A DNA stretch of 64,000 nucleotides, from the sequence record MN988561.1. One strand, 5' to 3'. Positions 9,597 through 58,775 of the stretch are shown here, in pieces. Numbering within the stretch: the stretch's first letter is position 1; every line of letters begins with the position of its first letter. The position numbers and the translations under genes were made by a program. The notes below the pieces were generated by a model. The model was not told where the DNA came from. It saw nothing but the letters and a program-made list of their open reading frames with translations, and searched no databases.

Positions 9597-9615
9597 GAGG
9601 TCGATTAACCTTCCT
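9589..9615 (+). promoter_or_regulatory. Putative phage promoter, class 1
   Basis: GCGAA-N13-AACCTTCCT. Confidence 0.7.
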
Positions 9616-10602: not shown

Positions 10603-10622
10603 NNNNNNNNNNNNNNNNNNNA

Positions 10623-27474: not shown

Positions 27475-27501
27475 GCGAAGTTAGGTGCGATAAACCTTCC
27501 T
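27475..27501 (+). promoter_or_regulatory. Putative phage promoter, class 1
   Basis: GCGAA-N13-AACCTTCCT. Confidence 0.7.
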
Positions 27502-29040: not shown

Positions 29041-29357
29041 AGTCTAGTAATCTATCTGCTGTCATAGAGCTCATGGATCTGAAAGAGAAGCTTAGACATC
29101 TAAGTGACTCAGAACATGGATTCATTAGAGTCGAGGTAGGTCAAGATAGTAGATGTAACTTCTTCAAAGATGGAAGTGCAAGTGTAGAAAGTGATTACGA
29201 TGACGACGATGATGATCGTGTGATCCTGTCTAAGTCTAATTCTAAGCACAAGAAGATATCTTTCGACATCTACACTCGCATTATACAGGTATTGCAGGAC
29301 TCTATCTCGGACTGCAACGTGGCTCTCAAACAACTAGGAGTTGAGATTGATGACTAA
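29037..29357 (+). CDS. Hypothetical protein
   Basis: GTG start, coupled. Confidence 0.6.
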   Translation: MKSSNLSAVIELMDLKEKLRHLSDSEHGFIRVEVGQDSRCNFFKDGSASVESDYDDDDDDRVILSKSNSKHKKISFDIYTRIIQVLQDSISDCNVALKQLGVEIDD

Positions 29358-30465: not shown

Positions 30466-30483
30466 CGAGGATAAATCATAGAT

Positions 30484-31197: not shown

Positions 31198-31203
31198 TAC
31201 TTT

Positions 31204-31239
31204 AAGTAGTAGCTTCGTACCAGCGGAGCTACTACTTTT
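31204..31239 (+). terminator. Rho-independent terminator
   Basis: AAGTAGTAGCTTCG-TACCAG-CGGAGCTACTACTT followed by TT. Confidence 0.75.
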
Positions 31240-31267
31240 CATTAATCTGGTAATCCTAGAGGGTTAA

Positions 31268-32305
31268 ATGTTTAAATATTTCGGTGGATCGTTCATTTTC
31301 GCAGCTGCAGCATTGATTGGACTGTATTTCTTCACAGGCAATCCTGCTGCTCTAGTGACAGCAGTTGTCCTCTCAATTGTAGAGGTAGCTGTTAGCTTCG
31401 ACAATGCTATCGTAAATGCATCAATCATGAAGACGATGTCTCCTTTCTGGAAGAAGATGTTCGTTACAGTCGGTATGTTGTTTGCAGTAGGATTCATGAG
31501 ACTATACTTCCCGATTCAGATCGTATCAGCGATTGGAGGTATCTCACTCCACGAAGCTGGTCATCTAGCTCTTGCTGAGCCTGATCGATTCTCTCACATT
31601 CTTATCGAATCTCATCACATCGTAGCTGGATTTGGTGGTGCATTCCTTATGCTCGTAGCATTGAAGTACTTTATCAATGCTGAGAAGGATGTCCACTGGG
31701 TACATGCTATTGAAGCACCTCTAGCATCTCTCGGTAAGCTTGATGAAGTCCAAGTTCTGATCGTAGCAGTTGTATCGTATATCCTTTCTCGCTATCTCGG
31801 AGATCATGGTACAGAGTTCTTCTATGCTGCTTTGATCGGTATCGGTACACATATTGTAGTTGATCTGATCAAAGAAACTCTGAGTCATATCGATACGTTT
31901 CTTGCTAAGGGAGCAGATGTAGCAGTCAAGGGAGGTCTTGGTGCATTCATCTATCTTGAAGTACTTGATGCATCCTTCTCGTTCGATGGAGTCATCGCTG
32001 CATTCGCTATCACCAATCAGATTGCAGTCGTAGCTGCAGGTCTTGGTATCGGTGCTATGTTCGTACGTAGTCTGACACTCATGCTTGACGATAAGGATAC
32101 TCTCACGACTTTCCGATATCTTGAGAGTGGTGCATTCTGGGCTATCGGTGGACTTGCTGCATTCATGTACATCAGCACACTTGTACATGTCTCAGAGTGG
32201 ATTATCGCAGGATTCTCTGCTGTAGTCATTCTCGTATCGTTCCTACATTCGATTAAGGCTAACAAGGATGAAGAACTCCTACAGCCTGTCCTCGAAATTC
32301 ATTAA
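31268..32305 (+). CDS. TerC-like integral membrane protein (DUF475)
   Basis: LSIVEVAVSFDNAIVNA, YLEVLDASFSFDGVIAAFAIT, YLESGAFWAIG. Confidence 0.9.
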   Translation: MFKYFGGSFIFAAAALIGLYFFTGNPAALVTAVVLSIVEVAVSFDNAIVNASIMKTMSPFWKKMFVTVGMLFAVGFMRLYFPIQIVSAIGGISLHEAGHLALAEPDRFSHILIESHHIVAGFGGAFLMLVALKYFINAEKDVHWVHAIEAPLASLGKLDEVQVLIVAVVSYILSRYLGDHGTEFFYAALIGIGTHIVVDLIKETLSHIDTFLAKGADVAVKGGLGAFIYLEVLDASFSFDGVIAAFAITNQIAVVAAGLGIGAMFVRSLTLMLDDKDTLTTFRYLESGAFWAIGGLAAFMYISTLVHVSEWIIAGFSAVVILVSFLHSIKANKDEELLQPVLEIH

Positions 32306-32334
32306 CATTAACTCCTAGATAAGGATTTGGAGAA

Positions 32335-32919
32335 ATGATCGTGCTCGACCTCAATAAAGACGCAGGTATCGTACTGGATCTCAGCAAGGAAGATCCGACC
32401 CTTGAGACTCTCAAGATCAAGCTGGACTGGAATCCTCATCCAGTTCACGGCGCTAGCCTGACAGATGGCTTCGACTTGGATATCTTCGCATATGTTCTCA
32501 ATGAACAAGGCAAGATCACTAGTGGTTCTGATGTTGTATTCTTCAATAATAAGAATTTCGCTAATGGTGCTATTGTTCTTCCTAAGGACAACCGTACTGG
32601 TGAAGGTGACGACGATGAAGAATTGCTCATCACCACGTCTAAGATTCCTGCAGACAAGAAGTCTGTAGCTATCTATGTGACCATTCACAAGGCTACAGAA
32701 CGTGGTCATCACTTCGGTATGGTATCTGGAGCATCTCTCCAGTTCATCAATGCTGACTCTGGTAAGATTATTGCCAAGTATGACCTGACTGCCAACTACT
32801 CTGGTAATACTGCATTCTTTGGTGGTATCCTTTCTGTCGAGAATGGTAAGGGTAAGTTCCAATCGAATGGTGAAGCAGCAGACGCAGATCCTAACCAGAT
32901 CGCTCAGCTGTACGTTTAA
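32335..32919 (+). CDS. terD: TerD-family protein
   Basis: LDWNP, FDLDIFA, VVFFNN, DNRTGEGDDDEE, VTIH, HFGMV. Confidence 0.9.
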   Translation: MIVLDLNKDAGIVLDLSKEDPTLETLKIKLDWNPHPVHGASLTDGFDLDIFAYVLNEQGKITSGSDVVFFNNKNFANGAIVLPKDNRTGEGDDDEELLITTSKIPADKKSVAIYVTIHKATERGHHFGMVSGASLQFINADSGKIIAKYDLTANYSGNTAFFGGILSVENGKGKFQSNGEAADADPNQIAQLYV

Positions 32920-41624: not shown

Positions 41625-41651
41625 GCGAAGGAGCGTCCCTTAAGCCTTCCT
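41625..41651 (+). promoter_or_regulatory. Putative phage promoter, class 1
   Basis: GCGAA-N13-AGCCTTCCT, directly after a terminator. Confidence 0.8.
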
Positions 41652-47211: not shown

Positions 47212-47412
47212 ATGTCGAGCACCAAGGCTAAGAAAGAAGACTTGACTCCAGAGCAAATCATGGAGCTAAAGGAGACTCACGTTATCCTTCACGAGGATGA
47301 TGTTTATATCGAGTTCGTTCCCAATATCGTGGAAACGATTATGCTCGATAAGTTTTTCAGTGCAATCAACCCAGAAGAAGAGAATAATGGCGACAACAAC
47401 CTCACAACCTAG
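47212..47412 (+). CDS. Hypothetical protein
   Basis: AAGGAG RBS; 66 aa. Confidence 0.65.
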   Translation: MSSTKAKKEDLTPEQIMELKETHVILHEDDVYIEFVPNIVETIMLDKFFSAINPEEENNGDNNLTT

Positions 47413-48712
47413 TGCAGCTCCGATCGCACAGATTGAAGCTCGTAATCTTATCGAGGCTGATTATCTCGAGTACGGTGCATACGTGAACACGACTCGATCT
47501 GTTCCAGGCTATGATGGTCTGAAGTCAGGTCAACGTCGTGTTCTCTTTGCATTAAGAGATGTAGATGATGGATCTGATGAAATTCCTTCTCTGGAAGTAG
47601 TTACTCAGACTCTGAAGAAGTACCATCCTCACGGTGATGCCTCTATCTACGATACGATGTGTCGACATATCCACAAGGGGTTTATCGAAGGTCGTAGTAA
47701 CTTCGGTACCAATCACTTGATGGAAGAAATCGGTGCAGCCGCATACCGATATACCTATGTGAAGCCTCATAAGCAATTCACTGATGGTGCGTTTCGATTC
47801 ATCGATCAAGTACCGACTGTTGAGAATGAGTACGGTTTTAATGAACCTACGTATCTACCAGTACCGATTCCTCTAGGACTAACAACTGGTGCAAAGGGTA
47901 TCGGTATTGGTCTTCTCTGCAACATTCCTGCATTTTCTCCTAAGTCTCTTTTTGATGCACTTATGGCAGATGATCCTTCTCGTCTGAAAGCACCTGCTGG
48001 TACTTTTATTGTAAGTGGCGATATGGATAAGCTCTGGAAGACAGGTGAAGGCTGGATCCAATATGGTCTCAAGTGCTATCAGACTTGGCATGATCTGGAC
48101 GGTAAGACCGTATCAGTTATTGAAGGATCTGGTCGTATCTTCAAGCCTCGTATCTGGGATACTTTCTCTACATTGATTGAAGATGAAAGTGTTTATACTC
48201 GAGACGAATCTGGTGAAAAGATCAAGATGATCATCACTCGAGTCAAGGGTCTTAAGCGTATTACTGATGAACAAGTTCACCAGATGGCTCAGCAAGCAGC
48301 TGTCGAGAAGATGTTCTTCCGTATCTATGTTACTGAGAACAAGGTCGTTTACCGTAAGTCGATGAAAGACTGGATGCAGGAACTATGGGCTCGTTACGAG
48401 AAGGTAGTTGATACGTACAAGACTACTCAAGTTAATGATTTGAATCATCGTATCAAAATCCTGAACCTGATTCCTGTAGTAGCACCTAGCATTCTTCAGG
48501 ATCTTCCGATTGCTGAAATCGCTAAGACGACTGGAGCTAGTGAAGCTGATCTTCGAGAAGTCGAAGGGAAGTCGATCAAGATGCTTCGTAAGTCAGACTT
48601 TGGTGCTCAGATTACTGATCTCAATAAGAAGATTACCAATGTCCAGAAGATCAGTGCTAAGGCTCTAGCAGTTGACTTCGTTGATATGCTTGAGAAGGCT
48701 CAGGCTATCTAA
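47387..48712 (+). CDS. Type IIA topoisomerase cleavage subunit (GyrA/ParC-like, no CTD)
   Basis: DGLKSGQRRVLF, YHPHGDASIY, AAAYRYT (catalytic Tyr); ATG 47387. Confidence 0.92.
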   Translation: MATTTSQPSAAPIAQIEARNLIEADYLEYGAYVNTTRSVPGYDGLKSGQRRVLFALRDVDDGSDEIPSLEVVTQTLKKYHPHGDASIYDTMCRHIHKGFIEGRSNFGTNHLMEEIGAAAYRYTYVKPHKQFTDGAFRFIDQVPTVENEYGFNEPTYLPVPIPLGLTTGAKGIGIGLLCNIPAFSPKSLFDALMADDPSRLKAPAGTFIVSGDMDKLWKTGEGWIQYGLKCYQTWHDLDGKTVSVIEGSGRIFKPRIWDTFSTLIEDESVYTRDESGEKIKMIITRVKGLKRITDEQVHQMAQQAAVEKMFFRIYVTENKVVYRKSMKDWMQELWARYEKVVDTYKTTQVNDLNHRIKILNLIPVVAPSILQDLPIAEIAKTTGASEADLREVEGKSIKMLRKSDFGAQITDLNKKITNVQKISAKALAVDFVDMLEKAQAI

Positions 48713-48738: not shown

Positions 48739-50685
48739 ATGACTGAATCAATTTCGATTATGACGCCACTCCAGCAGATGTTCCACCGTCGTGGTATGTA
48801 CATCGGTGGCGCTGAGAATCCTGAAATCCTGGCTAAGGAACTTATCGATAACGCACTCGATGAACTCCTCTGCGGTTATGCCGATCGAATTGAATTCGAT
48901 TGGGATCTCAAAGAAGGATGGTTCAGGATTCGAGATAATGGTCGAGGCATGCCTCTATCTCAGTTCCATACTGAAGATCAGGACATGTCTGGATTGAATG
49001 GAGCTATTCAGGCTCGTCTTCTCTTCACTCGTCCATTCTCGTCTGGTAAGTATGACAAGAATAACTACAAGTATTCGTCCGGTACGAATGGTGTAGGTAT
49101 CAAGGCAGTCAACGTTTTCAGTACGAAGACTGAAGTACGTGTCAAGGATAAGAAGCTCGTTCATAATGGCGATCTGTATCATCTCACTCTTGGATGGACT
49201 GAGCCAGAACGTGTCCAGACAATTGATGAGCAGTGGATTGATGCTAGCACGATTGAAGACTTCTGGTGGTCTACTGAAGTCAAGTGCTATCCGAATATGG
49301 AAGTCTTTAAGACGATCAAGTGCAAGATTCGTGAGACTCAGCTTCAGCTAGCTAAGACTTCGAAGCCTAACTGTAAGATCGTTGTCAATGGTGAAGAGAT
49401 CAAGCCATTCTCGTTCCGTGAGAGTGTTACTAATGATCTCCTTCTGAATAAGACTTTCAAAGTCAATGTCACGGTTGGATATACCAACTTCGAGATTGAA
49501 CTTGGATGGTCCTCTAAAGATTTCAATTCCTACTATCGTGGAGCAGTCAATCTTGGTTCATGTAATGAAGGTTGGCATATCAAGGAGACCAAGTATGCAG
49601 TAGGTCGAGTACTTGCTGGATATGATGATCTGTTGACTAACTCGGATGCCGAGTACGGTCTCCGTATGTTTATCAACTGCCTGATCTCTGAACCGATCTA
49701 CACTTCTCAGACCAAGGAGAAGTTAGCTGGTGTGACTGACTTCGATGTATTCAATGAAGCATTGATGCGTAAGAAGTATGCCGATCTTATCGAGAAGGAT
49801 GAGAACGGTAGAGAGAATGTCGTCAAGGCTAAGGAAGCAGTCAAGAATGATCCTGAATTCCTGAAACCTGAGTTGCTCTATGCTGCTATTCAGAAAGCTG
49901 TCAAGAAAGAACTTGATCAGGATGAATCGTTCAAGACAGTTCTTGTTAAGAGAATTGTTGAGTACAAGAAATCTGTCCAGAAACTATCTGAGCAGAGCTT
50001 CATCAATTCTATCGTTAAGACTGGTAATCATAAGATCGCTAGAAATTCGGTAGTAGGTATCAAGGAGGCAGGGTCTGCTGATCGTGCTAAGTGCGAACTC
50101 TTCATCTGCGAAGGTAAGTCTGCAGAAGGTAATCTTCTTCAGAAGAGAGATCGTATGTTCCAGGCAGTCTTCCCTCTTCGTGGTAAGCCATTGAATGCTG
50201 CCAACGTGAGTGACATCAAACAGATTCTTGAGAATCGTGAGATGAAGACTCTGGTCAACGGCATCGGTGCAGGTATTCTTCCTCAGGTCGATCTTACTCA
50301 TGCTCGTTATGGTAAGTTGATCATCCTTACAGACGCTGACCCAGATGGTAAGAATATTGAAGCTCTCATTATCGGAGCTCTCTTGTTCTTGAATCCTAAG
50401 GTCATTGAAGCAGGTATGTTGTACACAGTAGCTGCTCCTCTGTACAAGCAGGATGGTAAGCTTCTATATTCAGAGAAGGATCTGAATATGAAGAAGAAAT
50501 TCAAGAGATTCAAAGGTCTTGGATCAATGATGGCTGACGAACTCGAAGCTAGTGCTCTGAAGTCAACTACTCGTAAGCTTCGTCAGATCACATTGACTGA
50601 AGCTCGTGAGAAAGCTCTCGAAATCATTACTTCTTCTCATGAGAAGAAGCGTATCATGACAATCAATAAAATCCTAGTGGAATAA
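48739..50685 (+). CDS. Type IIA topoisomerase ATPase/TOPRIM subunit (GyrB/ParE-like)
   Basis: GMYIG, ELIDNALDE, DNGRGMP, GTNGVG, EGKSA, PLRGK, DADPDG, FKGLG. Confidence 0.95.
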   Translation: MTESISIMTPLQQMFHRRGMYIGGAENPEILAKELIDNALDELLCGYADRIEFDWDLKEGWFRIRDNGRGMPLSQFHTEDQDMSGLNGAIQARLLFTRPFSSGKYDKNNYKYSSGTNGVGIKAVNVFSTKTEVRVKDKKLVHNGDLYHLTLGWTEPERVQTIDEQWIDASTIEDFWWSTEVKCYPNMEVFKTIKCKIRETQLQLAKTSKPNCKIVVNGEEIKPFSFRESVTNDLLLNKTFKVNVTVGYTNFEIELGWSSKDFNSYYRGAVNLGSCNEGWHIKETKYAVGRVLAGYDDLLTNSDAEYGLRMFINCLISEPIYTSQTKEKLAGVTDFDVFNEALMRKKYADLIEKDENGRENVVKAKEAVKNDPEFLKPELLYAAIQKAVKKELDQDESFKTVLVKRIVEYKKSVQKLSEQSFINSIVKTGNHKIARNSVVGIKEAGSADRAKCELFICEGKSAEGNLLQKRDRMFQAVFPLRGKPLNAANVSDIKQILENREMKTLVNGIGAGILPQVDLTHARYGKLIILTDADPDGKNIEALIIGALLFLNPKVIEAGMLYTVAAPLYKQDGKLLYSEKDLNMKKKFKRFKGLGSMMADELEASALKSTTRKLRQITLTEAREKALEIITSSHEKKRIMTINKILVE

Positions 50686-50686
50686 T

Positions 50687-51589
50687 ATGCTTAAACGTAA
50701 TGTTTTGTTGACAGGTTCAGCAGGATACATTGGATGCGTAGTCGGAGATCGACTACGCAAGTCCAACAATACTGCATTAACTACCTTAGATCGAAAATAT
50801 CATATTACTGAAGGTGCTCATCACATCCAAGGTGATGTGAAGAATCTTATCAATTCAGAACAAGATGTGCTCGTTCATCTCGCAGCATTGATCTCAGTAC
50901 CTGAGTCTCATAGTCACGCTGAAGAGTACTATGATAATAATTGTTCTCAATTTCATGAAATGCTGAATCTGAATCAAAATCACTTTGGTCATCTGATTTA
51001 TGCATCTTCATTCTCAATTTATGATGAGAATCTAGAGATCTATCCTAAATCCGTTTATGCTTCTACTAAATTAGAAGGTGAATGGATTGTAAAGAGATGG
51101 GCTCAGACGATGAATCAAGATTATTCGATTCTAAGATTTGCAAATCCGATTGGTGTTAGTCAATCACTCCACTCTCATATTGCAGATCGTATACAATCGA
51201 GTTACGCTAATGTTATGTGGAGACTTGCTCGATGCAAATTACTAGGCGAGATGTTTTATATTCATGACCTGCCTGGTATGACACGTGACTTTTATCCTGT
51301 TGAATGGATTGGATATGTTATCGACTGGATTGCTAAGAATGGTCCCGTAGGTACTGTAAATCTAGGTAGCGGTAAGCCTGTATCAGTTATGAATCTTCTT
51401 CAGCATATCTGTGAGAAGTATAATATCAGTTACAAGTATGTTCTACCACCTGAAGGTACTGCTCTAGGTATTACCAAGAAGGTTGATGTATTCAAAGAAG
51501 GGATTCCTGATTTTGATACCTACGATCCAGTTGCATATTGTGAGAAGTCGTTTTTAGATTATCTATCGTTGATTCAGAACGCGAATTAA
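50687..51589 (+). CDS. NAD-dependent nucleotide-sugar epimerase/dehydratase (GalE-like SDR)
   Basis: TGSAGYIG, HLAALISV.ES, YASS, YASTK. Confidence 0.9.
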   Translation: MLKRNVLLTGSAGYIGCVVGDRLRKSNNTALTTLDRKYHITEGAHHIQGDVKNLINSEQDVLVHLAALISVPESHSHAEEYYDNNCSQFHEMLNLNQNHFGHLIYASSFSIYDENLEIYPKSVYASTKLEGEWIVKRWAQTMNQDYSILRFANPIGVSQSLHSHIADRIQSSYANVMWRLARCKLLGEMFYIHDLPGMTRDFYPVEWIGYVIDWIAKNGPVGTVNLGSGKPVSVMNLLQHICEKYNISYKYVLPPEGTALGITKKVDVFKEGIPDFDTYDPVAYCEKSFLDYLSLIQNAN

Positions 51590-51607
51590 CGCTAGATTAG
51601 CCTTCCC
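51581..51607 (+). promoter_or_regulatory. Putative phage promoter, class 1
   Basis: GCGAA-N13-AGCCTTCCC. Confidence 0.75.
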
Positions 51608-51617
51608 TTCTCGTAGA

Positions 51618-51818
51618 ATGAATAAGAGGATCACCATGAAAGATCTACGTGAATTCAAATCTAAGCTTGATGCTAAGTTCGATACTCAGACATCTTGGGG
51701 TAAGAATCAGATCAAGCAAGTCATCAATGATACTTATATTGAAATCATTGAAAGTAAAGTAGAAGGTACTATCCAGCAGTCGACTCCTTCTAATCGTATC
51801 GACGAAGACTCTAAGTAA
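51618..51818 (+). CDS. Hypothetical protein
   Basis: 66 aa ORF; start may be ATG 51636 after GAGGA. Confidence 0.6.
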   Translation: MNKRITMKDLREFKSKLDAKFDTQTSWGKNQIKQVINDTYIEIIESKVEGTIQQSTPSNRIDEDSK

Positions 51819-51840
51819 TTTTCTAGTCAAGGTTAACAAT

Positions 51841-53028
51841 ATGAATTTTCTTTATATCACAAGAAGCATTGATCCGCTAGCTGCTGATCATCGTCCTGAA
51901 GCATATGATCGTTATCGATTCTATGCTCCGATGATGTCACGTCTAGCTGAGATCGGTGGAGGTGACGTCTACCTTCAGACTCGTTATAATCCTAAGGATT
52001 ATCGTCCTGGTGGTACGATTGAAAGAATGGAAAGAAATTTCCGTCTTCCTAAGAAGTACAAGACTGGTGATAAGATTGACATGATCGTATGTGCCATCTT
52101 CTGCCCAGACGATGACATTACATTCAATGAGGATCTGAACAAGTTCCGTCAGACTCTTGAAGATACTGGTGCACCATACATCTATCACGACTCTGATAAA
52201 GAGTTCTCCACTCAGGATGATCAGCAAGATCTTTTCCATCCAGGTAATAAGAACTATTTCCTTCAGACAATATCTAAGCTTCCAGAGGATGACATCCTCC
52301 GATCCCGACTACGCTGCGTGGCTACGTCGGTTCCGGATGCAGATTATCATCAGATTCTGAAGGATAATCTCAAGGTCGATGTAACGTATCTACCTGCTAC
52401 GTTCTGGGGAGACTGGAAAGATAAGTTTGGATACATTCCTCTTTCTGAACGTAAGTACGATCTGACATTCCTTCGTGACTTCTATCTGAATCCGAAGCGT
52501 TCAGTCATTCTGAAGAATCTTGGTACTGGTGTATCGGATATCAGTGTTCTTCTTGGATCTCGTAGTGGCGACCCTTCTAGTCGTGGAGGATACATCAGCC
52601 ATAAGGTTCCGACGATTGATTTCGATCAGATGCGTCAAGGTGCTACGTACAATGATCTATCGAAGTACATGTCTAAGTCTCGTCTGACTCCGTCTACGAG
52701 TATTTATATGCGTGTCACTTCTAAGCTATTCGAAGCAGCTGAGAGTCGTACTCTAGCACTACTCTTCTCTCCGTGCTTCTATTCAGACGTAGTTGATCAC
52801 CCTTCTGAGGCAGATGCTTATCTGAGTCAACTTGCTCTTGTAATTCCAGGATCCACTACTGTAAGTCAGTTGATTACACGTATTCGTAGTCTGACTGATG
52901 AAGAATATCTGAAGCTTGTCGAGGTTCAGGATAAGCTCGTTGAGACTGTATTCAGTATCAAATCTGATTACATCACTAGCAAGCTGACTAAGATCATCAC
53001 AGATTATGTAGGTAATGTGAATGGCTAA
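51841..53028 (+). CDS. Putative GT-B glycosyltransferase (beta-glucosyltransferase-like C-terminal lobe)
   Basis: YDLTF...KR, VTSKLFEAAESRTLAL, QLITRIRSL..EYLKLVEVQ echo the GT-B nucleotide-binding lobe. Comparison by eye only. Confidence 0.5.
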   Translation: MNFLYITRSIDPLAADHRPEAYDRYRFYAPMMSRLAEIGGGDVYLQTRYNPKDYRPGGTIERMERNFRLPKKYKTGDKIDMIVCAIFCPDDDITFNEDLNKFRQTLEDTGAPYIYHDSDKEFSTQDDQQDLFHPGNKNYFLQTISKLPEDDILRSRLRCVATSVPDADYHQILKDNLKVDVTYLPATFWGDWKDKFGYIPLSERKYDLTFLRDFYLNPKRSVILKNLGTGVSDISVLLGSRSGDPSSRGGYISHKVPTIDFDQMRQGATYNDLSKYMSKSRLTPSTSIYMRVTSKLFEAAESRTLALLFSPCFYSDVVDHPSEADAYLSQLALVIPGSTTVSQLITRIRSLTDEEYLKLVEVQDKLVETVFSIKSDYITSKLTKIITDYVGNVNG

Positions 53029-53899
53029 TGTTCTAGTTACTCTCATTACCAATCGTCCAGATGTTTCTTCGGAACGATGGATCGGTACCATCGGAAAGCT
53101 ATCTAAGCTTTCCGAGTACCATGATATGACCTACTCGATTCTTCTGCAACCTCCTTTTACAGTAGAAGACTGTGATAAAGTTCGTACTAGAGTACTTGAA
53201 GCACTCGGTCCTAAGAATCAGGTAGTCGTAGAGCATTTTATTAATCCTCCAGGTCCATTCAATTTTAGAACTGCTCGAAATCAGGCTATGTTGAATGTAC
53301 CGTATCTGAATACTTTTGATTACGTTCTTATCACTGACGATGACTTCAAGTTCAGTGGTCCTACTCCTAAGGGATATGACTCATGGGAACGTTATCATCA
53401 GGCTATTAAGTATCTCGATGAGAACCGTCGATGCGGTGGTGTATTAATCAAAGGTATGTTTGGATCTCCTCCAGTCGATAAGGGTGGAAATGAGGTATCA
53501 AAAGTACATGACGAGTACTACTCGACCAATCGAGGCATTCTTCATCGTAATGTGATGAAGTACGATAACGTAGATTGGATCTACTCAAATGAATGCTTCG
53601 ATTATCCTTCTGCTCTCGAGGATGCAGCAGCTTGTTTCTCTCGAATTGAGCTCGGCTACTATTATGCTCGTATCTGGAAGTCACCCACCACACCTCTTCC
53701 TGTGAAGCAGACATGTGCTGATGACATCCCTGATGACAATATCTATTCGCGACATATGGTCAATGAAGTAGGTATTGGTAAAGCTATTCGTGAACGTTAC
53801 GACGATCCTACATGGGAAGTCGATCAGAAGCGTATGCCTAAGAAACTCAATAATCTTAAACTCGAAGCCATGAACAGTCGTGGATGGGTTGTAACCTAA
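53021..53899 (+). CDS. Putative GT-A (GT2-like) glycosyltransferase
   Basis: FNFRTARNQ, YVLITDDD (DxD), EDAAAC. Confidence 0.6.
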   Translation: MANVLVTLITNRPDVSSERWIGTIGKLSKLSEYHDMTYSILLQPPFTVEDCDKVRTRVLEALGPKNQVVVEHFINPPGPFNFRTARNQAMLNVPYLNTFDYVLITDDDFKFSGPTPKGYDSWERYHQAIKYLDENRRCGGVLIKGMFGSPPVDKGGNEVSKVHDEYYSTNRGILHRNVMKYDNVDWIYSNECFDYPSALEDAAACFSRIELGYYYARIWKSPTTPLPVKQTCADDIPDDNIYSRHMVNEVGIGKAIRERYDDPTWEVDQKRMPKKLNNLKLEAMNSRGWVVT

Positions 53900-53910: not shown

Positions 53911-54150
53911 ATGAAACATCTTCTTGAGAAAGCAACGACTCTCGTCAAGCAGTCTAATAAATTGACTCTGGAATACCGTAAGTCTCCAGATGAATTGAAA
54001 TCTAAGACTCAAGAGATCGTCAAGCACTTTCTCGAATTCAACGAGATCGAATCGAAAGAAGATTTCATTGATCAATTGTCGTCCAAATCTGAGGAGACAG
54101 GTAATATGGATTACCTGTCTGCAGCTGAGATTATCCGAGAGTACTCTTAA
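53911..54150 (+). CDS. Small helical hypothetical protein
   Basis: AAGGAG RBS before ATG 53911. Confidence 0.65.
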   Translation: MKHLLEKATTLVKQSNKLTLEYRKSPDELKSKTQEIVKHFLEFNEIESKEDFIDQLSSKSEETGNMDYLSAAEIIREYS

Positions 54151-54455
54151 TGTTTAAAATTACTGTAGAGTCGTCTCAACCTGTTAAGAGTATCAACATT
54201 GAGTTCGGTGAAACTCAGGAGACGAAGGCTGAATTCTATCCTGTACCGACCTTTGAGACTAGAGGTGTAGAGAGTCTTAAATACGAGACTCCTCCTTCAT
54301 CTGAGTCATATGAAGACGTTCTAGCAAGACGAGCATCGACTGTATCGACTACTCCTGTAAAGCCTAAAGAGACTGAGACTGCTCCAGAAGTAGTCGAGGA
54401 TCTTACTAATCGACCTGCACTTGTTGATCAATCCTTTGCAGGATCTACTTTCTAA
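54150..54455 (+). CDS. Hypothetical protein; candidate ParM adaptor
   Basis: Short beta-rich N-terminus, disordered acidic Pro/Thr linker, aromatic C-terminal tip (FAGSTF); lies directly upstream of parM. Confidence 0.6.
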   Translation: MFKITVESSQPVKSINIEFGETQETKAEFYPVPTFETRGVESLKYETPPSSESYEDVLARRASTVSTTPVKPKETETAPEVVEDLTNRPALVDQSFAGSTF

Positions 54456-54463
54456 GAGGTAAT

Positions 54464-55429
54464 ATGAAAACTGTATTAGGTCTTGATCCTGGGTACGGAG
54501 ACTTCAAGGTATGCTTCGGTAATTCTAAAGGGATTATCTCTAAGCTATACAAGTTCAACTCCGTACTAGGTCGTGTTGATGTCAGTCAACATATCAACGA
54601 TACTCGAGTTTATGGATATAAAGGTACGACCTACTATGTAGGTGAGATGGCCTTGAAACTTGAGTCATCTCGAATCATCGACTTGATGTCTTACAACAAT
54701 CTGGAGACATTCTCTCCTCTTCTGATTGAACATGTCATCAATGAACTCGGAGAAGTTCCTGATATCGTCGTATGTGGTCTTTCGATTGCTCACGTTGATT
54801 ATTCAGGGTACTATCGAGATGCGATTCTTAACTATCTTGTTAAGGAGAAGAATCTTCCAATCAAAGATGTCCGCATCATCCCACAGGGTGTAGGTGGTAA
54901 GTTAACGTATGACAAGTATGGTCGTACATTCCCTGCCCTCACATCAGAATTCAGTGATGACAACAACTATGTAGGTTGTGATATTGGATTCAATACACTC
55001 GATGTATTCCATGTCATTCAGAACAAGGTATCTCCTAACTTGATTAGAGGTATTGAAAGTCAAGGTGTAGTCAAGATTGTGACTCGTCTTCTTGACTACA
55101 TCAAGAATGACTACAGTCTGGAATTCTCTGTCAAGGAAGGTAAGAACATCCTTGATAATGGTCAATTTAAGATCCGTGGACGTGAATTTGATGTCACCAA
55201 ACAGATTGAAGTGATCAAACGCTCTTATCTTGAAGAAGTCAAGGAACTCATCGAGAATGAGTTCGGAGCAGTACTTGACAAGGTCGAGAAGATCAAGATG
55301 TTTGGAGGAGGTTCATATCTCTTCAATACGATGAATGACTCCTTCATCGAAACTCCAGAATCTCGTGCTGAATACTATAATTCCATCGGGAATTATCTAC
55401 ATGGCTTGACGATTGTCGAGAAAGATTAA
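54464..55429 (+). CDS. parM: ParM/StbA-family actin-like ATPase
   Basis: Actin-fold motifs: GLDPGYGDFK (phosphate 1), IIPQG (connect 1), CDIGFNTLD (phosphate 2), FGGGS (adenosine). Confidence 0.9.
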   Translation: MKTVLGLDPGYGDFKVCFGNSKGIISKLYKFNSVLGRVDVSQHINDTRVYGYKGTTYYVGEMALKLESSRIIDLMSYNNLETFSPLLIEHVINELGEVPDIVVCGLSIAHVDYSGYYRDAILNYLVKEKNLPIKDVRIIPQGVGGKLTYDKYGRTFPALTSEFSDDNNYVGCDIGFNTLDVFHVIQNKVSPNLIRGIESQGVVKIVTRLLDYIKNDYSLEFSVKEGKNILDNGQFKIRGREFDVTKQIEVIKRSYLEEVKELIENEFGAVLDKVEKIKMFGGGSYLFNTMNDSFIETPESRAEYYNSIGNYLHGLTIVEKD

Positions 55430-55433
55430 TCTT

Positions 55434-55473
55434 AAGGTCTACTAGAAGAGATTCTAGTAGACCTTTTCTTTTT
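55434..55473 (+). terminator. Rho-independent terminator
   Basis: Perfect 14-bp stem AAGGTCTACTAGAA-GAGA-TTCTAGTAGACCTT followed by TTCTTTTT. Confidence 0.9.
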
Positions 55474-55851: not shown

Positions 55852-56580
55852 ATGGCTCGTTGCTATGTAGGATGTAGTGGATTCTCGTATAATCATTGGA
55901 ATGATAACTTCTACCCTGCAGGAGTAGAGAGGTTCTCATTTTATACGAGTCAATTTGATTCATTAGAGATCAATAGTTCATTCTACAGATTACCTAGTGC
56001 AAGCGTATTCCACTCATGGTATCGACGATCACCTGCTCATATGACATTCACTGTGAAAGCTCCTCAGACGATTACTCATCGTAAGAAGCTAAAGGATGCT
56101 GACGATATAGTTCAGAGATTCTATGAGAATACTCTTGAGCTAGGTGACAAGATGAAATGTGTCTTATGGCAGTTACCTCCTAATTTCTCCATAAGAATGT
56201 ATGATCGTGTCAAGAAATTCTGTGACAGTATTCATAACAGATTTCCTAATTCAGCATTCGAGTTCAGACATCCTTCATGGATGCAGACTCACGTACCTCA
56301 ACTTCTATCTACATACGACTTTGAGTTTGTACGTACAGATTTTCATAAATACGTAAATGTATCCATGGATGGGTCCTCGTCTAAATTCCAGTACTACCGA
56401 TTACATGGACCTACAGGTCAGTATCACGGTCGTTACACTGATGAGTTTCTTGAGAATATAGCTGATCGTCTAACAGATGAATCATTCGTATTCTTCGACA
56501 ATGATGGTGGAGGTCAAGCTCCTAAGGATGCTAAAAGATTAATCAAAATTCTAGAGACAAGAAATGAAATTAAATTATAG
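55852..56580 (+). CDS. DUF72 (YecE) family protein
   Basis: YVGCSGFSYNHW, LEINSSFYRLP, FTVKAP..ITH, LWQLPP, AFEFRH.SW, YYRLHG, FFDND. Confidence 0.92.
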   Translation: MARCYVGCSGFSYNHWNDNFYPAGVERFSFYTSQFDSLEINSSFYRLPSASVFHSWYRRSPAHMTFTVKAPQTITHRKKLKDADDIVQRFYENTLELGDKMKCVLWQLPPNFSIRMYDRVKKFCDSIHNRFPNSAFEFRHPSWMQTHVPQLLSTYDFEFVRTDFHKYVNVSMDGSSSKFQYYRLHGPTGQYHGRYTDEFLENIADRLTDESFVFFDNDGGGQAPKDAKRLIKILETRNEIKL

Positions 56581-57109
56581 AGCATATGCAGGAATTGGAT
56601 CAAGAAGTACTCCTCCACATATTCTTGAGTTTATGAGAATTCTAGCATTCAAGCTTGGGTCTCAAGAAGATCCATGGACTGGTCGGTCAGGTCACGCTGA
56701 TGGTGCAGATGATGCATTCGAAGTAGGTATGGAACAAGCTAATGGACCTATGGAGATCTTTCTACCGTGGAGAGGTATGGCTAACAGTCGATGTAAGAGT
56801 GATTCTCCGTATTACGAAATCAAAACAATTGCTTACGATCTAGCTTCTAGGATTCACCCTAAATGGTACGGATTAACTCATGGAGCTAAGAAACTTCATG
56901 CTAGGAATACTTATCAAGTCTTAGGTTACGATCATCAGACTTGGAGTAAAGCTGTTGTATGCTATACTTCTGACGGTCTACCGATTGGAGGTACTCGTAC
57001 AGCGATTAAGATAGCAGAGATGCACGGTATTCCGGTTATCAATCTAGGTGATCCTGAGTGTAAATACGAAACTCCTGATCAAATTGTGGAATATTTAAAC
57101 TCTCTATAG
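56564..57109 (+). CDS. SLOG/DprA-like Rossmann-fold protein
   Basis: YAGIGSR.TP, RSGHADGAD, HARN..QVLG, GGTRTA. Confidence 0.8.
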   Translation: MKLNYRAYAGIGSRSTPPHILEFMRILAFKLGSQEDPWTGRSGHADGADDAFEVGMEQANGPMEIFLPWRGMANSRCKSDSPYYEIKTIAYDLASRIHPKWYGLTHGAKKLHARNTYQVLGYDHQTWSKAVVCYTSDGLPIGGTRTAIKIAEMHGIPVINLGDPECKYETPDQIVEYLNSL

Positions 57110-57110
57110 A

Positions 57111-57137
57111 GCGAATCTAGCGTGGGAAAGCCTTCCT
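57111..57137 (+). promoter_or_regulatory. Putative phage promoter, class 1
   Basis: GCGAA-N13-AGCCTTCCT. Confidence 0.8.
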
Positions 57138-57872: not shown

Positions 57873-58775
57873 ATGTTTGACATTAGAATTGACAATCCTG
57901 AACTTCATAAGATTCTTGAGTCTTATAAAGGCAAAAAGATTGATTTTTATCACAATGACGGCAACGCTGGGGACAGTGTGATTGCAGTTGGTACTTATCA
58001 GACTTTTGATAAGTACGATATCGAGTACTCTGCTTACAATAAGCCTCGTGCTCATAAGCAAACAAGTGATACTCTCTTTATAGCCGGTGGAGGTAATCTT
58101 GTAAATTATTACCCTAATGGTGAACGAGCTATCAAAGAGGGTATGAAGAAGTACGATAAAATTATTGTCCTTCCTCACTCTATCCGAGGTAAAGAAGAAC
58201 TTCTCAAGAAGATGGATAAAAGGTTCACAGTCTTTACTCGTGAAGTTCCATCTCATGAATACGTTAAGTCGATGGTCAGATCGGACGTAACTGTTCATCT
58301 TGAACATGATATGGCTTTCTTCATGGATGTAAAAGCTATCTTTGAAGATCCTACGATCAATGAGAAAGCTAATAAATTCTACATTAATAAACTTCGATCA
58401 ATCGGTCGAGGTCCTGAAGATGTTATTGGCAAGGATAATTACTGTTTCCGTGAAGACGTCGAAGCAGTTGTAGAGGTTAAGTCTTCTCAGAATGTCGATA
58501 TCTCTCATCTGTTCGAAAGAGGATTGGATCGTACGAACTCTTTCATCGCTGCTAATGCATTTCTAAAGTACATTGATGCTTCAAAGTCAATTACTACAAG
58601 TCGTCTTCATACAGGCATTGGTGCAGCTATGTGCGGTACTCCTGCTACGGTATTTGATAATTCATATGGCAAGATTTCTAGTATCTACGAATTCTCAATG
58701 AAGGATCGTGGATACAACTTCCGTGTAGGTCTCATTGATGAAATGAGATCAATTATCGAACGAATTGAGGACTGA
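57873..58775 (+). CDS. Polysaccharide pyruvyltransferase family protein
   Basis: GNAGDSVI, GGGNL, LPHSI, FTRE..S, HDMAF, TSRLH..I, DNSYGKI. Confidence 0.88.
   Translation: MFDIRIDNPELHKILESYKGKKIDFYHNDGNAGDSVIAVGTYQTFDKYDIEYSAYNKPRAHKQTSDTLFIAGGGNLVNYYPNGERAIKEGMKKYDKIIVLPHSIRGKEELLKKMDKRFTVFTREVPSHEYVKSMVRSDVTVHLEHDMAFFMDVKAIFEDPTINEKANKFYINKLRSIGRGPEDVIGKDNYCFREDVEAVVEVKSSQNVDISHLFERGLDRTNSFIAANAFLKYIDASKSITTSRLHTGIGAAMCGTPATVFDNSYGKISSIYEFSMKDRGYNFRVGLIDEMRSIIERIED

What the first reader, a model, noticed from the sequence alone, without database searches (positions are those of the whole stretch)
50687..53899. Epimerase plus BGT-like GT-B plus GT-A module: possible novel DNA (or virion) glycosylation
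Seen: a GalE-like SDR coupled to the topo II operon, then, after a class-1 promoter, two overlapping ORFs. In 51841-53028 the segments YDLTF...KR, VTSKLFEAAESRTLAL and QLITRIRSL..EYLKLVEVQ parallel, by eye, T4 beta-glucosyltransferase LDVIY...QR, ITLRVWETMASDAVML and ELIDRVNEL...KEMLSIQ. ORF 53021-53899 has a GT-A DxD motif. Established: T-even phages glucosylate hmC with BGT/AGT, and relatives add other or second sugars. Inference: co-expression with replication genes favours DNA hypermodification using a non-glucose NDP-sugar made by the epimerase. No ThyA-fold hydroxymethylase is in this window, so the acceptor base is unknown.
Basis: partly seen in the sequence, partly recalled or inferred. 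Interest (0 to 1): 0.7.

Follow-up and report, generated by a model that had tools for sequence, protein, structure and literature searches.

The report
Orphan phage sugar-transfer gene module
A 203-kb Rhizobium phage carries a sugar epimerase and two very rare glycosyltransferase genes that share a promoter type with its DNA-replication genes, but nothing shows that they decorate DNA, and the genome lacks every enzyme known to prepare DNA bases for sugar attachment.

Summary
The window is Rhizobium phage RHph_TM61 (Kleczkowskaviridae, Cuauhnahuacvirus). All ORFs exist as described.

- 50687-51589 is a GalE-like extended SDR: Pfam Epimerase 3.6e-21, GxxGxxG and YxxxK present.
- 53021-53899 (ORF-B) has a GT-A fold. 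All 50 listed PDB fold hits are GT-A-type, and DDD 106-108 is invariant in its 4-member family.
- The by-eye likeness to T4 BGT is colinear but no better than chance: BLASTP E 0.54, shuffle z 1.5, profile-profile E 0.19, no Pfam PF09198 hit. T4 BGT is rank 10 among many GT-B hits.

Both GTs are near-orphans (3-4 relatives in billions of proteins), have no membrane segment, are mildly acidic and are under purifying selection. They sit behind a phage-specific promoter-like motif shared with ThyX, primase and PolA units.

The complete genome has no detectable ThyA-fold hydroxylase or hydroxymethylase, no Tet/JBP match for its one annotated oxygenase, and no annotated DNA methyltransferase. DNA glycosylation is therefore unproven (about 0.25). 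A host surface-glycan acceptor is marginally favoured (about 0.3) because a pyruvyl transferase lies 4 kb away. The module is real; its acceptor is unknown.

The parts
47387..48712 (+). Topoisomerase II small (GyrA-like) subunit gene; the upstream part of the transcription unit that ends with the epimerase.
   Evidence: GenBank EVB64_255; ORF list.
48739..50685 (+). Topoisomerase II large (GyrB-like) subunit gene. Its stop lies 1 nt before the epimerase start.
   Evidence: pN/pS 0.02 against the TM30 lineage.
50687..51589 (+). GalE-like extended SDR, probably an NDP-hexose 4-epimerase (300 aa). It has G10xxG13xxG16, S107/S108 and Y124xxxK128. The exact substrate cannot be assigned.
   Evidence: Pfam PF01370 3.6e-21. 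phrog_540. TIGR01179 galE is the best NCBIfam hit, at 66 bits against a cut-off of 262. PDB sequence hits are GalE-type. The allele is divergent from the TM30 lineage: 55 of 299 residues differ, pS 0.44.
51581..51606 (+). Phage-specific promoter-like bipartite motif (GCGAA, about 13 nt, GATTAGCCTTCC), upstream of the small ORF, ORF-A and ORF-B.
   Evidence: 7 bipartite copies in the window against 0.09 expected, all on the + strand; the core 8-mer occurs 12 times against 0.7 expected. Genome-wide, 25 of the 26 + strand copies lie in the non-structural arm. Promoter function is inferred.
51618..51818 (+). Small ORF of 66 aa (60 aa from the internal ATG at 51636, as annotated in TM30). Function unknown. 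Not annotated in the TM61 record.
   Evidence: TM30 CDS EVB93_259. Sub-threshold DUF6137 hit, E 1.3e-4.
51841..53028 (+). ORF-A: an orphan, soluble protein of 395 aa, probably a GT-B-fold glycosyltransferase. Conserved residues in its 3-member family are R204, D207, R291, T293-S294-K295 and E298-A299-A300.
53021..53899 (+). ORF-B: an orphan, soluble GT-A-fold glycosyltransferase of 292 aa, probably metal-dependent. It has R86, an invariant D106-D107-D108, and an acidic pair at 200-201. It overlaps ORF-A by 8 nt.
   Evidence: Foldseek PDB: 61 hits at E<=1e-3, and all 50 listed hits are GT-A-type folds (TarS, AvpGT, TarP, GtrB, ArnC, glycogenin). AFDB clusters and Swiss-Prot give the same fold. 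Alignments. pN/pS 0.13.
53911..54455 (+). Two small ORFs of 79 and 101 aa in the same unit. The second is rich in Ser, Thr, Pro and Glu. Function unknown.
   Evidence: No Pfam match above cut-off.
54464..55429 (+). ParM/Alp-like actin homolog; the last gene of the unit.
   Evidence: Pfam MreB-like_C 1.2e-11 and ALP_N 2.2e-10. phrog_691.
55434..55465 (+). Intrinsic-terminator-like hairpin (14-bp stem followed by a T run) that closes the unit.
57873..58775 (+). Polysaccharide pyruvyl transferase, 4 kb downstream, behind another copy of the promoter-like motif (57111-57136). It may belong to the same glycan pathway; this is inferred.
   Evidence: Pfam PF04230 1.6e-16, 61.5 bits against a cut-off of 25.3. 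Motif copy. Restricted to this genus, with divergent alleles at 92.7% and 84.7% aa identity.

Best explanation
The region is a genus-restricted, cytoplasmic glycan-building module.

Shown:
- A GalE-like NAD-dependent SDR lies at the end of the topoisomerase II unit.
- It is followed by a separate unit under a phage-specific early/middle-type promoter-like motif. That unit encodes a small ORF, a probable GT-B glycosyltransferase (ORF-A), an 8-nt-overlapping GT-A glycosyltransferase with a conserved DDD motif (ORF-B), two small ORFs and a ParM-like actin, and it ends at a terminator-like hairpin.
- Both GTs lack membrane segments, are acidic and are under purifying selection.

Inferred:
- The epimerase supplies a 4-epimerised NDP-hexose from the host pool.
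- One GT attaches a first sugar and the other extends it, giving at least a disaccharide.
- The nearby pyruvyl transferase may cap the glycan with a pyruvate ketal.

Acceptor:
This is the least certain step. My marginally favoured reading is a non-DNA glycoconjugate made at the cytoplasmic face of the membrane: a lipid-linked precursor of the host's exopolysaccharide or LPS. The phage would alter the infected cell's surface glycan, for example to mask receptors against superinfection or against trapping of progeny. This follows the precedent of the prophage GT-A enzyme TarP, which glycosylates wall teichoic acid.

Confidence:
That this is a glycosyltransferase module is about 0.8. The specific host-glycan acceptor is about 0.3, which is the figure given in the confidence field.
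For: - Enzyme classes: SDR; GT-A; GT-B.
- Operon structure.
- Real, selected genes.
- No membrane segment, acidic proteins.
- Against a DNA acceptor, and so for another one: no ThyA-fold protein in any frame of the whole genome; none among 10 mid-sized hypotheticals; the only annotated 2OG oxygenase matched PF13640 only, with no Tet_JBP match; no DNA methyltransferase annotated.
- For a polysaccharide-type acceptor: a PF04230 polysaccharide pyruvyl transferase lies 4 kb away under the same motif class. The only distant ORF-A relative lies between a WbqC-like gene (a family known from O-antigen clusters) and a second, weakly GT1-like gene. The top structural matches are envelope-glycan enzymes: TarS and TarP, with GtrB and ArnC further down, for ORF-B; PimA, WaaB and TarM for ORF-A. 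The phage's tail region carries SGNH esterases and a pectin-lyase-fold protein, so it deals with host surface polysaccharide.
- From my own knowledge, not tested here: Rhizobium exopolysaccharide is pyruvylated.
Against: - No experiment bears on the acceptor.
- The module shares its promoter type with replication and nucleotide-metabolism genes. ORF-B homologs in two other phage lineages sit among ThyX, dCMP deaminase, exonuclease and DNA polymerase genes with no other sugar gene nearby. That placement is also what a DNA-modifying enzyme would show.
- ORF-B carries the R...DDD...ED pattern and the TarP-like fold reported for validated phage DNA GT-A enzymes (10.1101/2023.12.21.572611).
- The pyruvyl transferase is separated from the GTs by a terminator and four unrelated genes, so its link to them is only by neighbourhood.
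- Surface-glycan remodelling by a strictly lytic phage has few precedents.
Confidence: 0.3

Rival explanations
1. DNA hypermodification. The two GTs would add a mono- or disaccharide, made from an epimerised NDP-sugar, to bases of replicating phage DNA. This would protect the DNA from host nucleases. The acceptor would have to be a base made by a route not yet described.
For: - Early/middle promoter class shared with ThyX, primase and PolA units.
- ORF-B homologs are embedded in replication and nucleotide-metabolism blocks in two other lineages.
- The epimerase+GT and GT+GT layouts match subclasses II and I of validated phage DNA-glycosylation clusters. ORF-B has R86, DDD and an acidic pair, with TarS/TarP as top PDB hits, as reported for those GT-A enzymes (10.1101/2023.12.21.572611).
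- Language-model neighbours of ORF-A include PF09198 clusters.
- Another Rhizobium phage family, the Pootjesviridae, does carry hexosylated 5-hydroxycytosine (PMC13326640).
- 6-mer palindromes are not avoided.
Against: - The complete genome shows no ThyA homolog, no Tet/JBP match for its one annotated oxygenase, and no annotated C5-methyltransferase. All characterised systems need one of these.
- A canonical dTMP route is present: dCMP deaminase, dUTPase and ThyX.
- No BGT-family sequence signal.
- Both GTs are acidic, whereas T4 BGT has pI 9.05.
- GC-only 4-mer palindromes are depleted (CCGG observed/expected 0.61), which hints that cytosine sites are still exposed to restriction.
- The cited preprint itself rates GT contigs without a neighbouring base-modifying enzyme as less likely to act on DNA.
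Confidence: 0.25
2. Virion protein glycosylation. The GTs would decorate capsid or tail proteins, as reported for some actinobacteriophages and for chloroviruses.
For: - The enzymes are cytoplasmic and lack membrane segments.
- The top Foldseek hits for ORF-A are GtfC/Gtf3 enzymes, which glycosylate serine-rich proteins. GtfA is the top VIA hit.
- A 101-aa protein rich in Ser, Thr and Pro is encoded in the same unit.
Against: - The module lies in the non-structural arm.
- Its promoter-like motif is almost absent from the coding strand of the structural arm: 2 copies against 25.
- No GT lies near the capsid or tail genes.
Confidence: 0.1
3. Another cytoplasmic acceptor: a host protein, an RNA or tRNA, a small metabolite or a nucleotide. 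The function would be host takeover or counter-defence.
For: - The genes are early/middle, lack membrane segments and are restricted to one genus.
- In two lineages, ORF-B homologs lie immediately next to pieces of a polynucleotide kinase/phosphatase-like protein.
- The phage carries RtcB, many tRNAs and a TROVE-domain protein.
Against: There is no positive evidence for any particular acceptor. An epimerase with two GTs suggests an oligosaccharide product, which is unusual for regulatory glycosylation of a protein or an RNA.
Confidence: 0.2
4. ORF-A is not a glycosyltransferase but some other enzyme with a two-Rossmann-domain fold, for example a 2-epimerase-like or pyruvyl-transferase-like enzyme, or a protein whose fold was mispredicted.
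For: - Model pLDDT is 47, and the C-terminal half is below 50.
- There is no significant sequence or profile hit to any GT family.
Against: - GT-B transferases dominate the top ranks in two independent aligners and in the language-model search.
- The conserved motifs (R204/D207, and R291..K295..E298) sit where GT-B C-domain donor-binding motifs lie. The best, though non-significant, hhalign stretches fall on exactly these motifs.
Confidence: 0.1

Closest known systems
T4 beta-glucosyltransferase (CAZy GT63, Pfam PF09198)
   Different: - No significant sequence or profile similarity.
- No partner dCMP hydroxymethylase in the genome.
- ORF-A is acidic (pI 5.8) while BGT is basic (pI 9.05).
- ORF-A is 44 residues longer.
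- Many cellular GT-B enzymes match as well or better.
Phage DNA-glycosylation clusters associated with 5mYOX/TET or ThyA homologs (bioRxiv 10.1101/2023.12.21.572611), and the arabinosyl/hexosyl-5-hydroxycytosine clusters of RB69, DLP3 and Rhizobium phage RL38J1 (PMC13326640)
   Same: - Gene content: a sugar epimerase beside a GT (subclass II) and two successive GTs (subclass I).
- GT-A enzymes with an R...DDD...ED pattern and TarP as a top PDB homolog.
- GT-B enzymes that resemble BshA-, MshA- and PimA-type enzymes.
- One member family infects Rhizobium.
   Different: - The defining partner that creates the hydroxylated acceptor base (C5-methyltransferase plus TET-like oxygenase, or a ThyA homolog) is absent from the whole genome.
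- No dCTPase or dNMP-kinase set was recognised.
- The residue after the acidic pair is not Y or F.
- The held supplementary text of the preprint does not mention any Rhizobium phage.
TarP / TarS / TarM: wall-teichoic-acid glycosyltransferases of Staphylococcus aureus, of which TarP is prophage-encoded
   Same: They are the best or near-best structural matches: TarS rank 1 and TarP rank 4 for ORF-B, TarM rank 11 for ORF-A. They are soluble cytoplasmic enzymes that glycosylate a surface polymer before export. TarP shows that a phage-borne GT-A can remodel the host surface.
   Different: The host here is Gram-negative and has no teichoic acid. Sequence identity is 14-18%. ORF-B lacks the trimerisation and C-terminal domains of TarS and TarP. 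This phage is lytic, not a prophage.
Rhizobial exopolysaccharide assembly enzymes (ExoB/GalE epimerase, Pss/Exo glycosyltransferases, PssM/PssK-type pyruvyl transferases). Named from my own knowledge, not compared by sequence here.
   Same: The same set of enzyme classes lies within about 8 kb: a 4-epimerase, a GT-B, a GT-A and a PF04230 pyruvyl transferase. All are cytoplasmic.
   Different: No detectable sequence relationship was tested or found. There are no flippase, polymerase or priming-transferase genes. The genes are scattered among replication genes and do not form a polysaccharide locus.

Membership tests
T4 beta-glucosyltransferase family (GT63 / PF09198) | Sequence match to the family profile | tested here: not met
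   Pfam scans of ORF-A, P0002 and P0007 gave no PF09198 hit at E<=1. BLASTP against T4 BGT gave E 0.54. hhalign against a 7-member BGT alignment gave probability 0.3% and E 0.19. Shuffle z was 1.5.
T4 beta-glucosyltransferase family (GT63 / PF09198) | GT-B fold (two Rossmann-like domains) | tested here: inconclusive
T4 beta-glucosyltransferase family (GT63 / PF09198) | Hydroxymethylcytosine DNA as acceptor, with a phage dCMP hydroxymethylase present | tested here: not met
   phmmer --max with T4 gp42 against all six-frame ORFs of the 203-kb genome gave a best E of 0.39. The annotation shows only ThyX. The acceptor itself cannot be tested with these tools.
T4 beta-glucosyltransferase family (GT63 / PF09198) | Basic, DNA-binding protein surface | tested here: not met
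   Whole-protein pI is 5.8 for ORF-A and 9.05 for T4 BGT. This is a crude proxy only.
GT-A fold, DxD-type glycosyltransferases (GT2-like) | N-terminal alpha/beta/alpha nucleotide-sugar-binding domain | tested here: met
   Foldseek PDB gave 61 hits at E<=1e-3, and all 50 listed hits are GT-A-type folds. Swiss-Prot models align over residues 1-150 at rmsd of about 3.3 A. AFDB clusters agree. pLDDT over residues 1-110 is 60-87.
GT-A fold, DxD-type glycosyltransferases (GT2-like) | DxD metal-binding motif at the end of the fourth strand | tested here: met
   D106-D107-D108 are invariant in all four family members and directly follow the predicted strand 101-106.
GT-A fold, DxD-type glycosyltransferases (GT2-like) | Match to a curated GT family profile (for example PF00535) | tested here: not met
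   No Pfam, NCBIfam or PHROG hit for ORF-B or its relatives. The best PDB sequence hit has E 0.19.
Phage DNA-hypermodifying glycosyltransferase clusters | A GT encoded with a base-hydroxylating partner (ThyA homolog, or C5-methyltransferase plus 5mYOX/TET) | tested here: not met
   None is annotated in the whole genome. gp42 search. Ten hypotheticals scanned. The only annotated 2OG oxygenase matched PF13640 only.
Phage DNA-hypermodifying glycosyltransferase clusters | Epimerase+GT pairing, or two successive GTs | tested here: met
   Gene order is epimerase, small ORF, GT-B, GT-A.
Phage DNA-hypermodifying glycosyltransferase clusters | Glycosylated nucleosides in virion DNA | not testable with these tools
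   This needs LC-MS/MS of virion DNA. No sequencing run was listed for this region.
Extended SDR NDP-sugar 4-epimerase (GalE-like) | PF01370 domain, GxxGxxG NAD-binding motif and Ser / YxxxK catalytic residues | tested here: met
   PF01370 at 76 bits against a cut-off of 20.9. G10/G13/G16, S107/S108 and Y124/K128 were read from the translation.
Extended SDR NDP-sugar 4-epimerase (GalE-like) | Equivalog-level match to UDP-glucose 4-epimerase | tested here: not met
   TIGR01179 scores 66 bits against a cut-off of 262. The substrate therefore cannot be assigned.

The most novel reading that the evidence does not exclude
The module glycosylates phage DNA on an acceptor made by a route that uses neither a ThyA homolog nor a TET-like oxygenase. 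The glycan might also be capped with pyruvate by the neighbouring PF04230 enzyme.

One candidate for the missing hydroxylase is the FAD-binding phrog_4828 protein (window 9649-10635). It recurs together with ThyX and the rare GT-A in all three phage lineages that carry an ORF-B homolog, and it sits behind a bipartite copy of the same promoter-like motif.
Probability: 0.1. Interest if true: 0.85.

Novelty: new member of a known kind. Interest (0 to 1): 0.42.

Why it matters
- Phage-encoded glycosyltransferases decide what a phage's DNA, its virion or its host's surface looks like to defence systems and to competing phages.
- These two proteins belong to sequence families with only three or four known members and match no curated family model, so they would probably be unclassified in CAZy.
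- If they modify DNA, this would be the first glycosylation pathway that does not start from a ThyA- or TET-made hydroxylated base.
- If they remodel rhizobial exopolysaccharide or LPS, that would be a rare case of a lytic phage editing the surface of a nitrogen-fixing symbiont. It would bear on phage resistance of inoculant strains.
- On present evidence it is a solid annotation upgrade, from two hypothetical proteins to GT-B and GT-A, with an open and testable acceptor question.

Tried and rejected
1. Natural deletion or fusion variants. In RHph_TM39 the epimerase and ORF-A are annotated as one 677-aa CDS, and RHph_TM21B seemed to lack the epimerase, DUF72 and the pyruvyl transferase. Every junction is a run of N, so these are scaffold gaps and not real deletions. 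Rejected as evidence.

2. P0006 (E 5e-8 in the exhaustive search) is an InlB-type repeat protein. The hit is spurious.

3. A conserved partner as the missing acceptor-maker. ThyX, a 328-aa FAD-binding protein, a HAD/PNKP-like protein and ORF-B recur in three lineages. But the flavoprotein belongs to phrog_4828, a widespread phage family, and the HAD neighbours are halves of a polynucleotide kinase/phosphatase-like protein. I kept this only as a lead.

4. The Z-genome idea. The PurA-like protein scores 99 bits to PurA models and 36 bits to PurZ, far below both cut-offs. The PolA scores 35 bits to DpoZ against a cut-off of 500. Not supported.

5. The sigma-70 consensus scan found 27 sites against 36 expected, so no host-type promoter can be called.

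6. Palindrome avoidance was ambiguous: GC-only 4-mers are depleted (p 6e-4), while 6-mers are not.

7. IMG/VR scans found one more ORF-B relative, on a 4.7-kb contig with no informative neighbours, and none for ORF-A.

8. The profile search with the 3-member ORF-A alignment found nothing new.

9. No sequencing runs were listed.

10. The PhiM9 paper (PMC4621102) does not mention glycosylation, restriction or modification. The DUF72 and pyruvyl-transferase literature searches added nothing.

11. There is no close out-group for synteny. The topoisomerase, ORF-A, ORF-B and the pyruvyl transferase are all confined to the ten Cuauhnahuacvirus records.

Full report
IDENTITY OF THE WINDOW. The region is 100% identical to Rhizobium phage RHph_TM61 (MN988561.1; 202,964 bp; Kleczkowskaviridae, genus Cuauhnahuacvirus; host R. 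etli). Window position equals genome position minus 62,000. Nine further records of the same genus carry the region at 95-100% nucleotide identity. No other phage record has a detectable ORF-A, and only two weak partial hits exist for ORF-B.

THE OBSERVATION. All ORFs are present as described. GenBank annotates them as 'UDP-glucose 4-epimerase' (EVB64_257) and two 'hypothetical proteins' (EVB64_259 and _260).

The epimerase gene starts 1 nt after the stop of the topoisomerase II large-subunit gene. ORF-A (51841-53028) and ORF-B (53021-53899) overlap by 8 nt.

Between the epimerase and ORF-A lie a 66-aa ORF and a motif, at 51581-51606, that is clearly non-random:
- GCGA-N8-14-WARCCTTC occurs 7 times in the window against 0.09 expected, always on the + strand.
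- The core AGCCTTCC occurs 12 times against 0.7 expected.
- Genome-wide, 25 of the 26 + strand copies lie in the non-structural arm. Only 2 lie on the coding strand of the 43-kb structural arm.
- Copies precede ThyX, the primase/helicase, an exonuclease and the HD-nucleotidase/PolA unit.

That it acts as a promoter is inferred. A host-type sigma-70 scan was not enriched. A strong terminator-like hairpin at 55434-55465 follows the ParM-like gene. The unit is therefore: motif, small ORF, ORF-A, ORF-B, two small ORFs, ParM-like gene, terminator.

THE EPIMERASE. The protein matches Pfam PF01370 (3.6e-21), phrog_540 'nucleotide-sugar epimerase' (1.7e-29) and GalE-type structures as its best PDB sequence hits. 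It has G10xxG13xxG16, S107/S108 and Y124xxxK128. The best NCBIfam model is galE, but at 66 bits against a cut-off of 262. The class is secure; the substrate is not.

Compared with the TM30 lineage, the epimerase differs at 55 of 299 residues (pS 0.44), while the flanking genes have pS of 0.05-0.10. This is an exchanged or much older allele.

ORF-B IS A GT-A GLYCOSYLTRANSFERASE. No Pfam, PHROG or NCBIfam model matches it. Only three relatives were found: P0004, P0005 and L018, at 26-37% identity.

The AF2 model is poor overall (pLDDT 52) but acceptable over residues 1-110. Its fold matches are uniform:
- 61 PDB chains at E<=1e-3. All 50 listed hits are GT-A-type folds, nearly all of them glycosyltransferases (TarS, AvpGT, TarP, GtrB, ArnC, glycogenin, LH3, B3GalT5).
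- AFDB clusters and Swiss-Prot models give the same result, with about 150 residues aligned at rmsd 3.3 A.

R86, D106-D107-D108 (directly after the predicted fourth strand) and an acidic pair at 200-201 are conserved in all four sequences. pN/pS is 0.13.

ORF-A IS PROBABLY A GT-B GLYCOSYLTRANSFERASE, BUT NOT DEMONSTRABLY BGT-LIKE. It is nearly an orphan. Two word-indexed searches of 5.8 billion proteins and one exhaustive HMMER pass over 1.84 billion representatives found only two relatives: P0002 (46% identity, on a 2.7-kb contig) and P0007 (about 20% identity).

The model has pLDDT 47 and an unreliable C-terminal half. The structural evidence is still consistent:
- The Foldseek top 10 are the GT-B enzymes GtfC and Gtf3 (E 5e-4 to 2e-2).
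- The language-model search puts it next to viral clusters carrying PF09198 and PF13524.

Their significance is nil:
- BLASTP gives E 0.54, on other regions.
- Smith-Waterman z against 500 shuffles is 1.5 for the full proteins and 0.3 for the C-domains.
- hhalign against T4 BGT alone gives probability 0.06%.
- hhalign against a 7-member BGT alignment built from phage records gives probability 0.3% and E 0.19.

A control against a GT1-like protein aligns the VTSKLFEAAE helix with the canonical GT1 glutamate motif at E 0.15. The eye probably picked up generic GT-B C-domain motifs, not a BGT relationship. pN/pS for ORF-A is 0.034.

PROPERTIES RELEVANT TO THE ACCEPTOR.
- Neither GT nor the epimerase has a membrane segment: maximum 19-residue hydropathy is 1.14 or less.
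- ORF-A and ORF-B are acidic (pI 5.8 and 6.1), while T4 BGT has pI 9.05.
- The two GTs are not a conserved pair. Contigs with ORF-B homologs carry no ORF-A-like or epimerase-like gene within about 20 kb, and the contig with the ORF-A relative carries no ORF-B-like gene.

IS THERE AN ACCEPTOR BASE? Characterised phage DNA glycosyltransferases act on one of the following:
- 5-hydroxymethyl-pyrimidines or 5-hydroxycytosine made by ThyA homologs;
- 5hmC made on DNA by a C5-methyltransferase plus a TET-like oxygenase.

This rests on bioRxiv 10.1101/2023.12.21.572611 and on PMC13326640. The latter shows Gal-Glc-Glc on 5-hydroxycytosine in Rhizobium phage RL38J1 of the Pootjesviridae.

I read the whole RHph_TM61 annotation:
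- It has ThyX, dCMP deaminase, dUTPase, DHFR and RNR, which is a canonical dTMP route.
- It has no ThyA homolog and no DNA methyltransferase.
- Its single small 2OG-Fe(II) oxygenase matched only PF13640, with no Tet_JBP match.
- A maximally sensitive phmmer search with T4 gp42 against every six-frame ORF of 50 aa or more gave only noise, with best E 0.39.
- Ten mid-sized hypotheticals had no thymidylate-synthase domain.

As an indirect test, GC-only 4-mer palindromes are depleted (CCGG observed/expected 0.61, GGCC 0.71; Mann-Whitney p 6e-4), but 6-mer palindromes are not. That is ambiguous, and it leans slightly against full cytosine protection. No public sequencing run was listed.

CONTEXT ELSEWHERE. 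ORF-B homologs sit in replication and nucleotide-metabolism blocks of two other phage lineages. Their neighbours include ThyX, dCMP deaminase, an RNase T-like exonuclease, a PF04447 dATP/dGTP pyrophosphohydrolase and Pol III alpha.

An all-against-all comparison showed that these lineages share only four families with RHph_TM61 in common (L006 shares two more: a dCMP deaminase and an exonuclease):
- ThyX;
- ORF-B;
- a 328-aa protein with an N-terminal GAGxAG FAD-binding motif;
- a HAD/PNKP-like protein whose two halves lie immediately upstream of ORF-B in the two lineages.

The flavoprotein belongs to phrog_4828, a widespread phage family with an amine-oxidase-like fold. Its co-occurrence with ORF-B is therefore weak evidence, and I keep it only as a lead.

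The ORF-A relative P0007 lies between a WbqC-like gene (a family known from O-antigen clusters) and a second, weakly GT1-like gene. That is a glycan-assembly context.

In RHph_TM61 itself, a PF04230 polysaccharide pyruvyl transferase lies 4 kb downstream behind another motif copy. Like the epimerase, it is allelically variable within the genus (92.7% and 84.7% aa identity), while the GTs stay at about 99%. The family as a whole is reported to be unusually rich in carbohydrate-active enzymes (bioRxiv 10.64898/2026.08.04.742344).

INTERPRETATION. The following are shown:
- a GalE-like SDR, a GT-A with a conserved DDD and a probable GT-B;
- all three cytoplasmic and under selection;
- the GT pair translationally coupled, and sitting behind a promoter-like motif of the class that precedes replication genes.

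The following are inferred: the epimerase feeds a 4-epimerised NDP-hexose to the GTs, which build at least a disaccharide.

The acceptor is undetermined. My estimates are:
- host envelope-glycan precursor, about 0.3;
- DNA, about 0.25;
- another cytoplasmic target, about 0.2;
- virion proteins, about 0.1;
- ORF-A not being a GT at all, about 0.1.

The ranking of the first two is soft. For DNA speak the placement, the timing and the cluster architecture. Against it speak the absence of any known acceptor-making enzyme in a complete genome, the acidic proteins and the lack of BGT-family signal. For a polysaccharide-type acceptor speak the pyruvyl transferase, the P0007 context and the TarP precedent.

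NOVELTY. A phage epimerase-plus-glycosyltransferase module is a known kind of system. What is new is that both transferases belong to tiny, unclassified sequence families. The finding is a useful re-annotation with an open, experimentally tractable acceptor question, not a demonstrated new DNA modification.

ARTEFACTS NOTED. The TM39 'epimerase-ORF-A fusion' CDS and the TM21B 'deletions' are read-throughs of N-filled scaffold gaps. The TM61 record and this window also contain N runs, for example near 57.2 kb and 10.6 kb.

Noticed in passing
window 2469-2493, 3491-3515, 9589-9613, 27475-27499, 41625-41649, 51581-51605, 57111-57135 (bipartite form); further AGCCTTCC cores at 12476, 20278, 24402, 33618 and 46663: A phage-specific bipartite motif (ATTCAGCGAA, about 10 nt, GAT(T/A)AGCCTTCC) is strongly over-represented. 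It is confined to the coding strand of the non-structural arm and precedes ThyX, the primase/helicase, the exonuclease, the topoisomerase unit and the PolA unit. It is probably the early/middle promoter class of this genus.
   Followed up: partly
window 9649-10635 (genome 71649-72635); L006:3507-4463; L010:5172-6137: A 328-aa FAD-binding protein (GAGxAG start, amine-oxidase-like fold, phrog_4828, unknown function) lies near ThyX in RHph_TM61 and in both metagenomic phage lineages that carry an ORF-B homolog. It may be a ThyX-linked flavoenzyme.
   Followed up: partly
window 15286-16008; L006:9200-9724; L010:9181-9573: The 'dehalogenase-like hydrolase' is a fusion of a HAD phosphatase domain (DxD motif FAIDFDG; phrog_1238) and a domain like the C-terminal part of a polynucleotide kinase/phosphatase (phrog_4889). 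In the two other lineages, one or the other half is a separate gene immediately upstream of the ORF-B homolog.
   Followed up: partly
L002:10176-11426 (PurA-like); L004:13305-13964 (HD 5'-deoxynucleotidase); L004:13964-17293 (UDG-PolA fusion). All are outside the window.: A very divergent adenylosuccinate-synthetase homolog scores 99 bits to PurA models whose cut-offs are about 400, and 36 bits to PurZ. An HD nucleotidase sits directly upstream of a 1109-aa DNA polymerase A with an N-terminal family-4 UDG domain. The layout recalls the PurZ/DatZ/DpoZ aminoadenine system, but no cut-off is met.
   Followed up: partly
window 50687-51589 and 57873-58775: The epimerase (82% aa identity, pS 0.44) and the pyruvyl transferase (92.7% and 84.7% aa identity) are much more divergent between sister phages than their neighbours, which are at about 99%. 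This suggests allele exchange or diversification of the sugar-tailoring genes, while the transferases stay fixed.
   Followed up: partly
L016:1501-3534 (MN988559.1, EVB32_242); L015 (MN988560.1): The GenBank CDS that fuses the epimerase and ORF-A in RHph_TM39, and the apparent multi-gene deletions in RHph_TM21B, span runs of 20-111 N. They are scaffold-gap artefacts, not biology.
   Followed up: yes
window 54464-55429 and 55434-55465: A ParM/Alp7A-like actin homolog is co-transcribed with the GT genes and is followed by a 14-bp-stem terminator-like hairpin. A 101-aa protein rich in Ser, Thr, Pro and Glu (54150-54455) lies just upstream.
   Followed up: no
window 55852-57109: A DUF72 (YecE-like) protein and a DprA/SLOG-like protein (phrog_768) have overlapping genes just downstream of the terminator. 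Their role in a phage is unknown.
   Followed up: no
L013:276-3340: The only distant ORF-A relative (P0007) is flanked by a WbqC-like gene (PF08889) and by a 372-aa protein with sub-threshold GT1-family hits (PF13692, PF13524 and PF00534, E about 0.01). This is a small glycan-assembly cluster on a 4.1-kb contig of unknown origin.
   Followed up: partly
whole genome (L001-L005): GC-only 4-mer palindromes are depleted relative to a second-order (trinucleotide-based) expectation: CCGG 0.61, GGCC 0.71, CGCG 0.78, GCGC 0.82. 6-mer palindromes are not. Genome G+C is 41%; the host's is about 61% (the host figure is from memory).
   Followed up: partly
window 29350-32919 (genome 91350-94919): A tellurite-resistance-type cluster (a TelA-like 'toxic anion resistance' protein, a vWA protein, DUF475 and TerD) lies inside the replication arm. 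I saw it only in the annotation.
   Followed up: no
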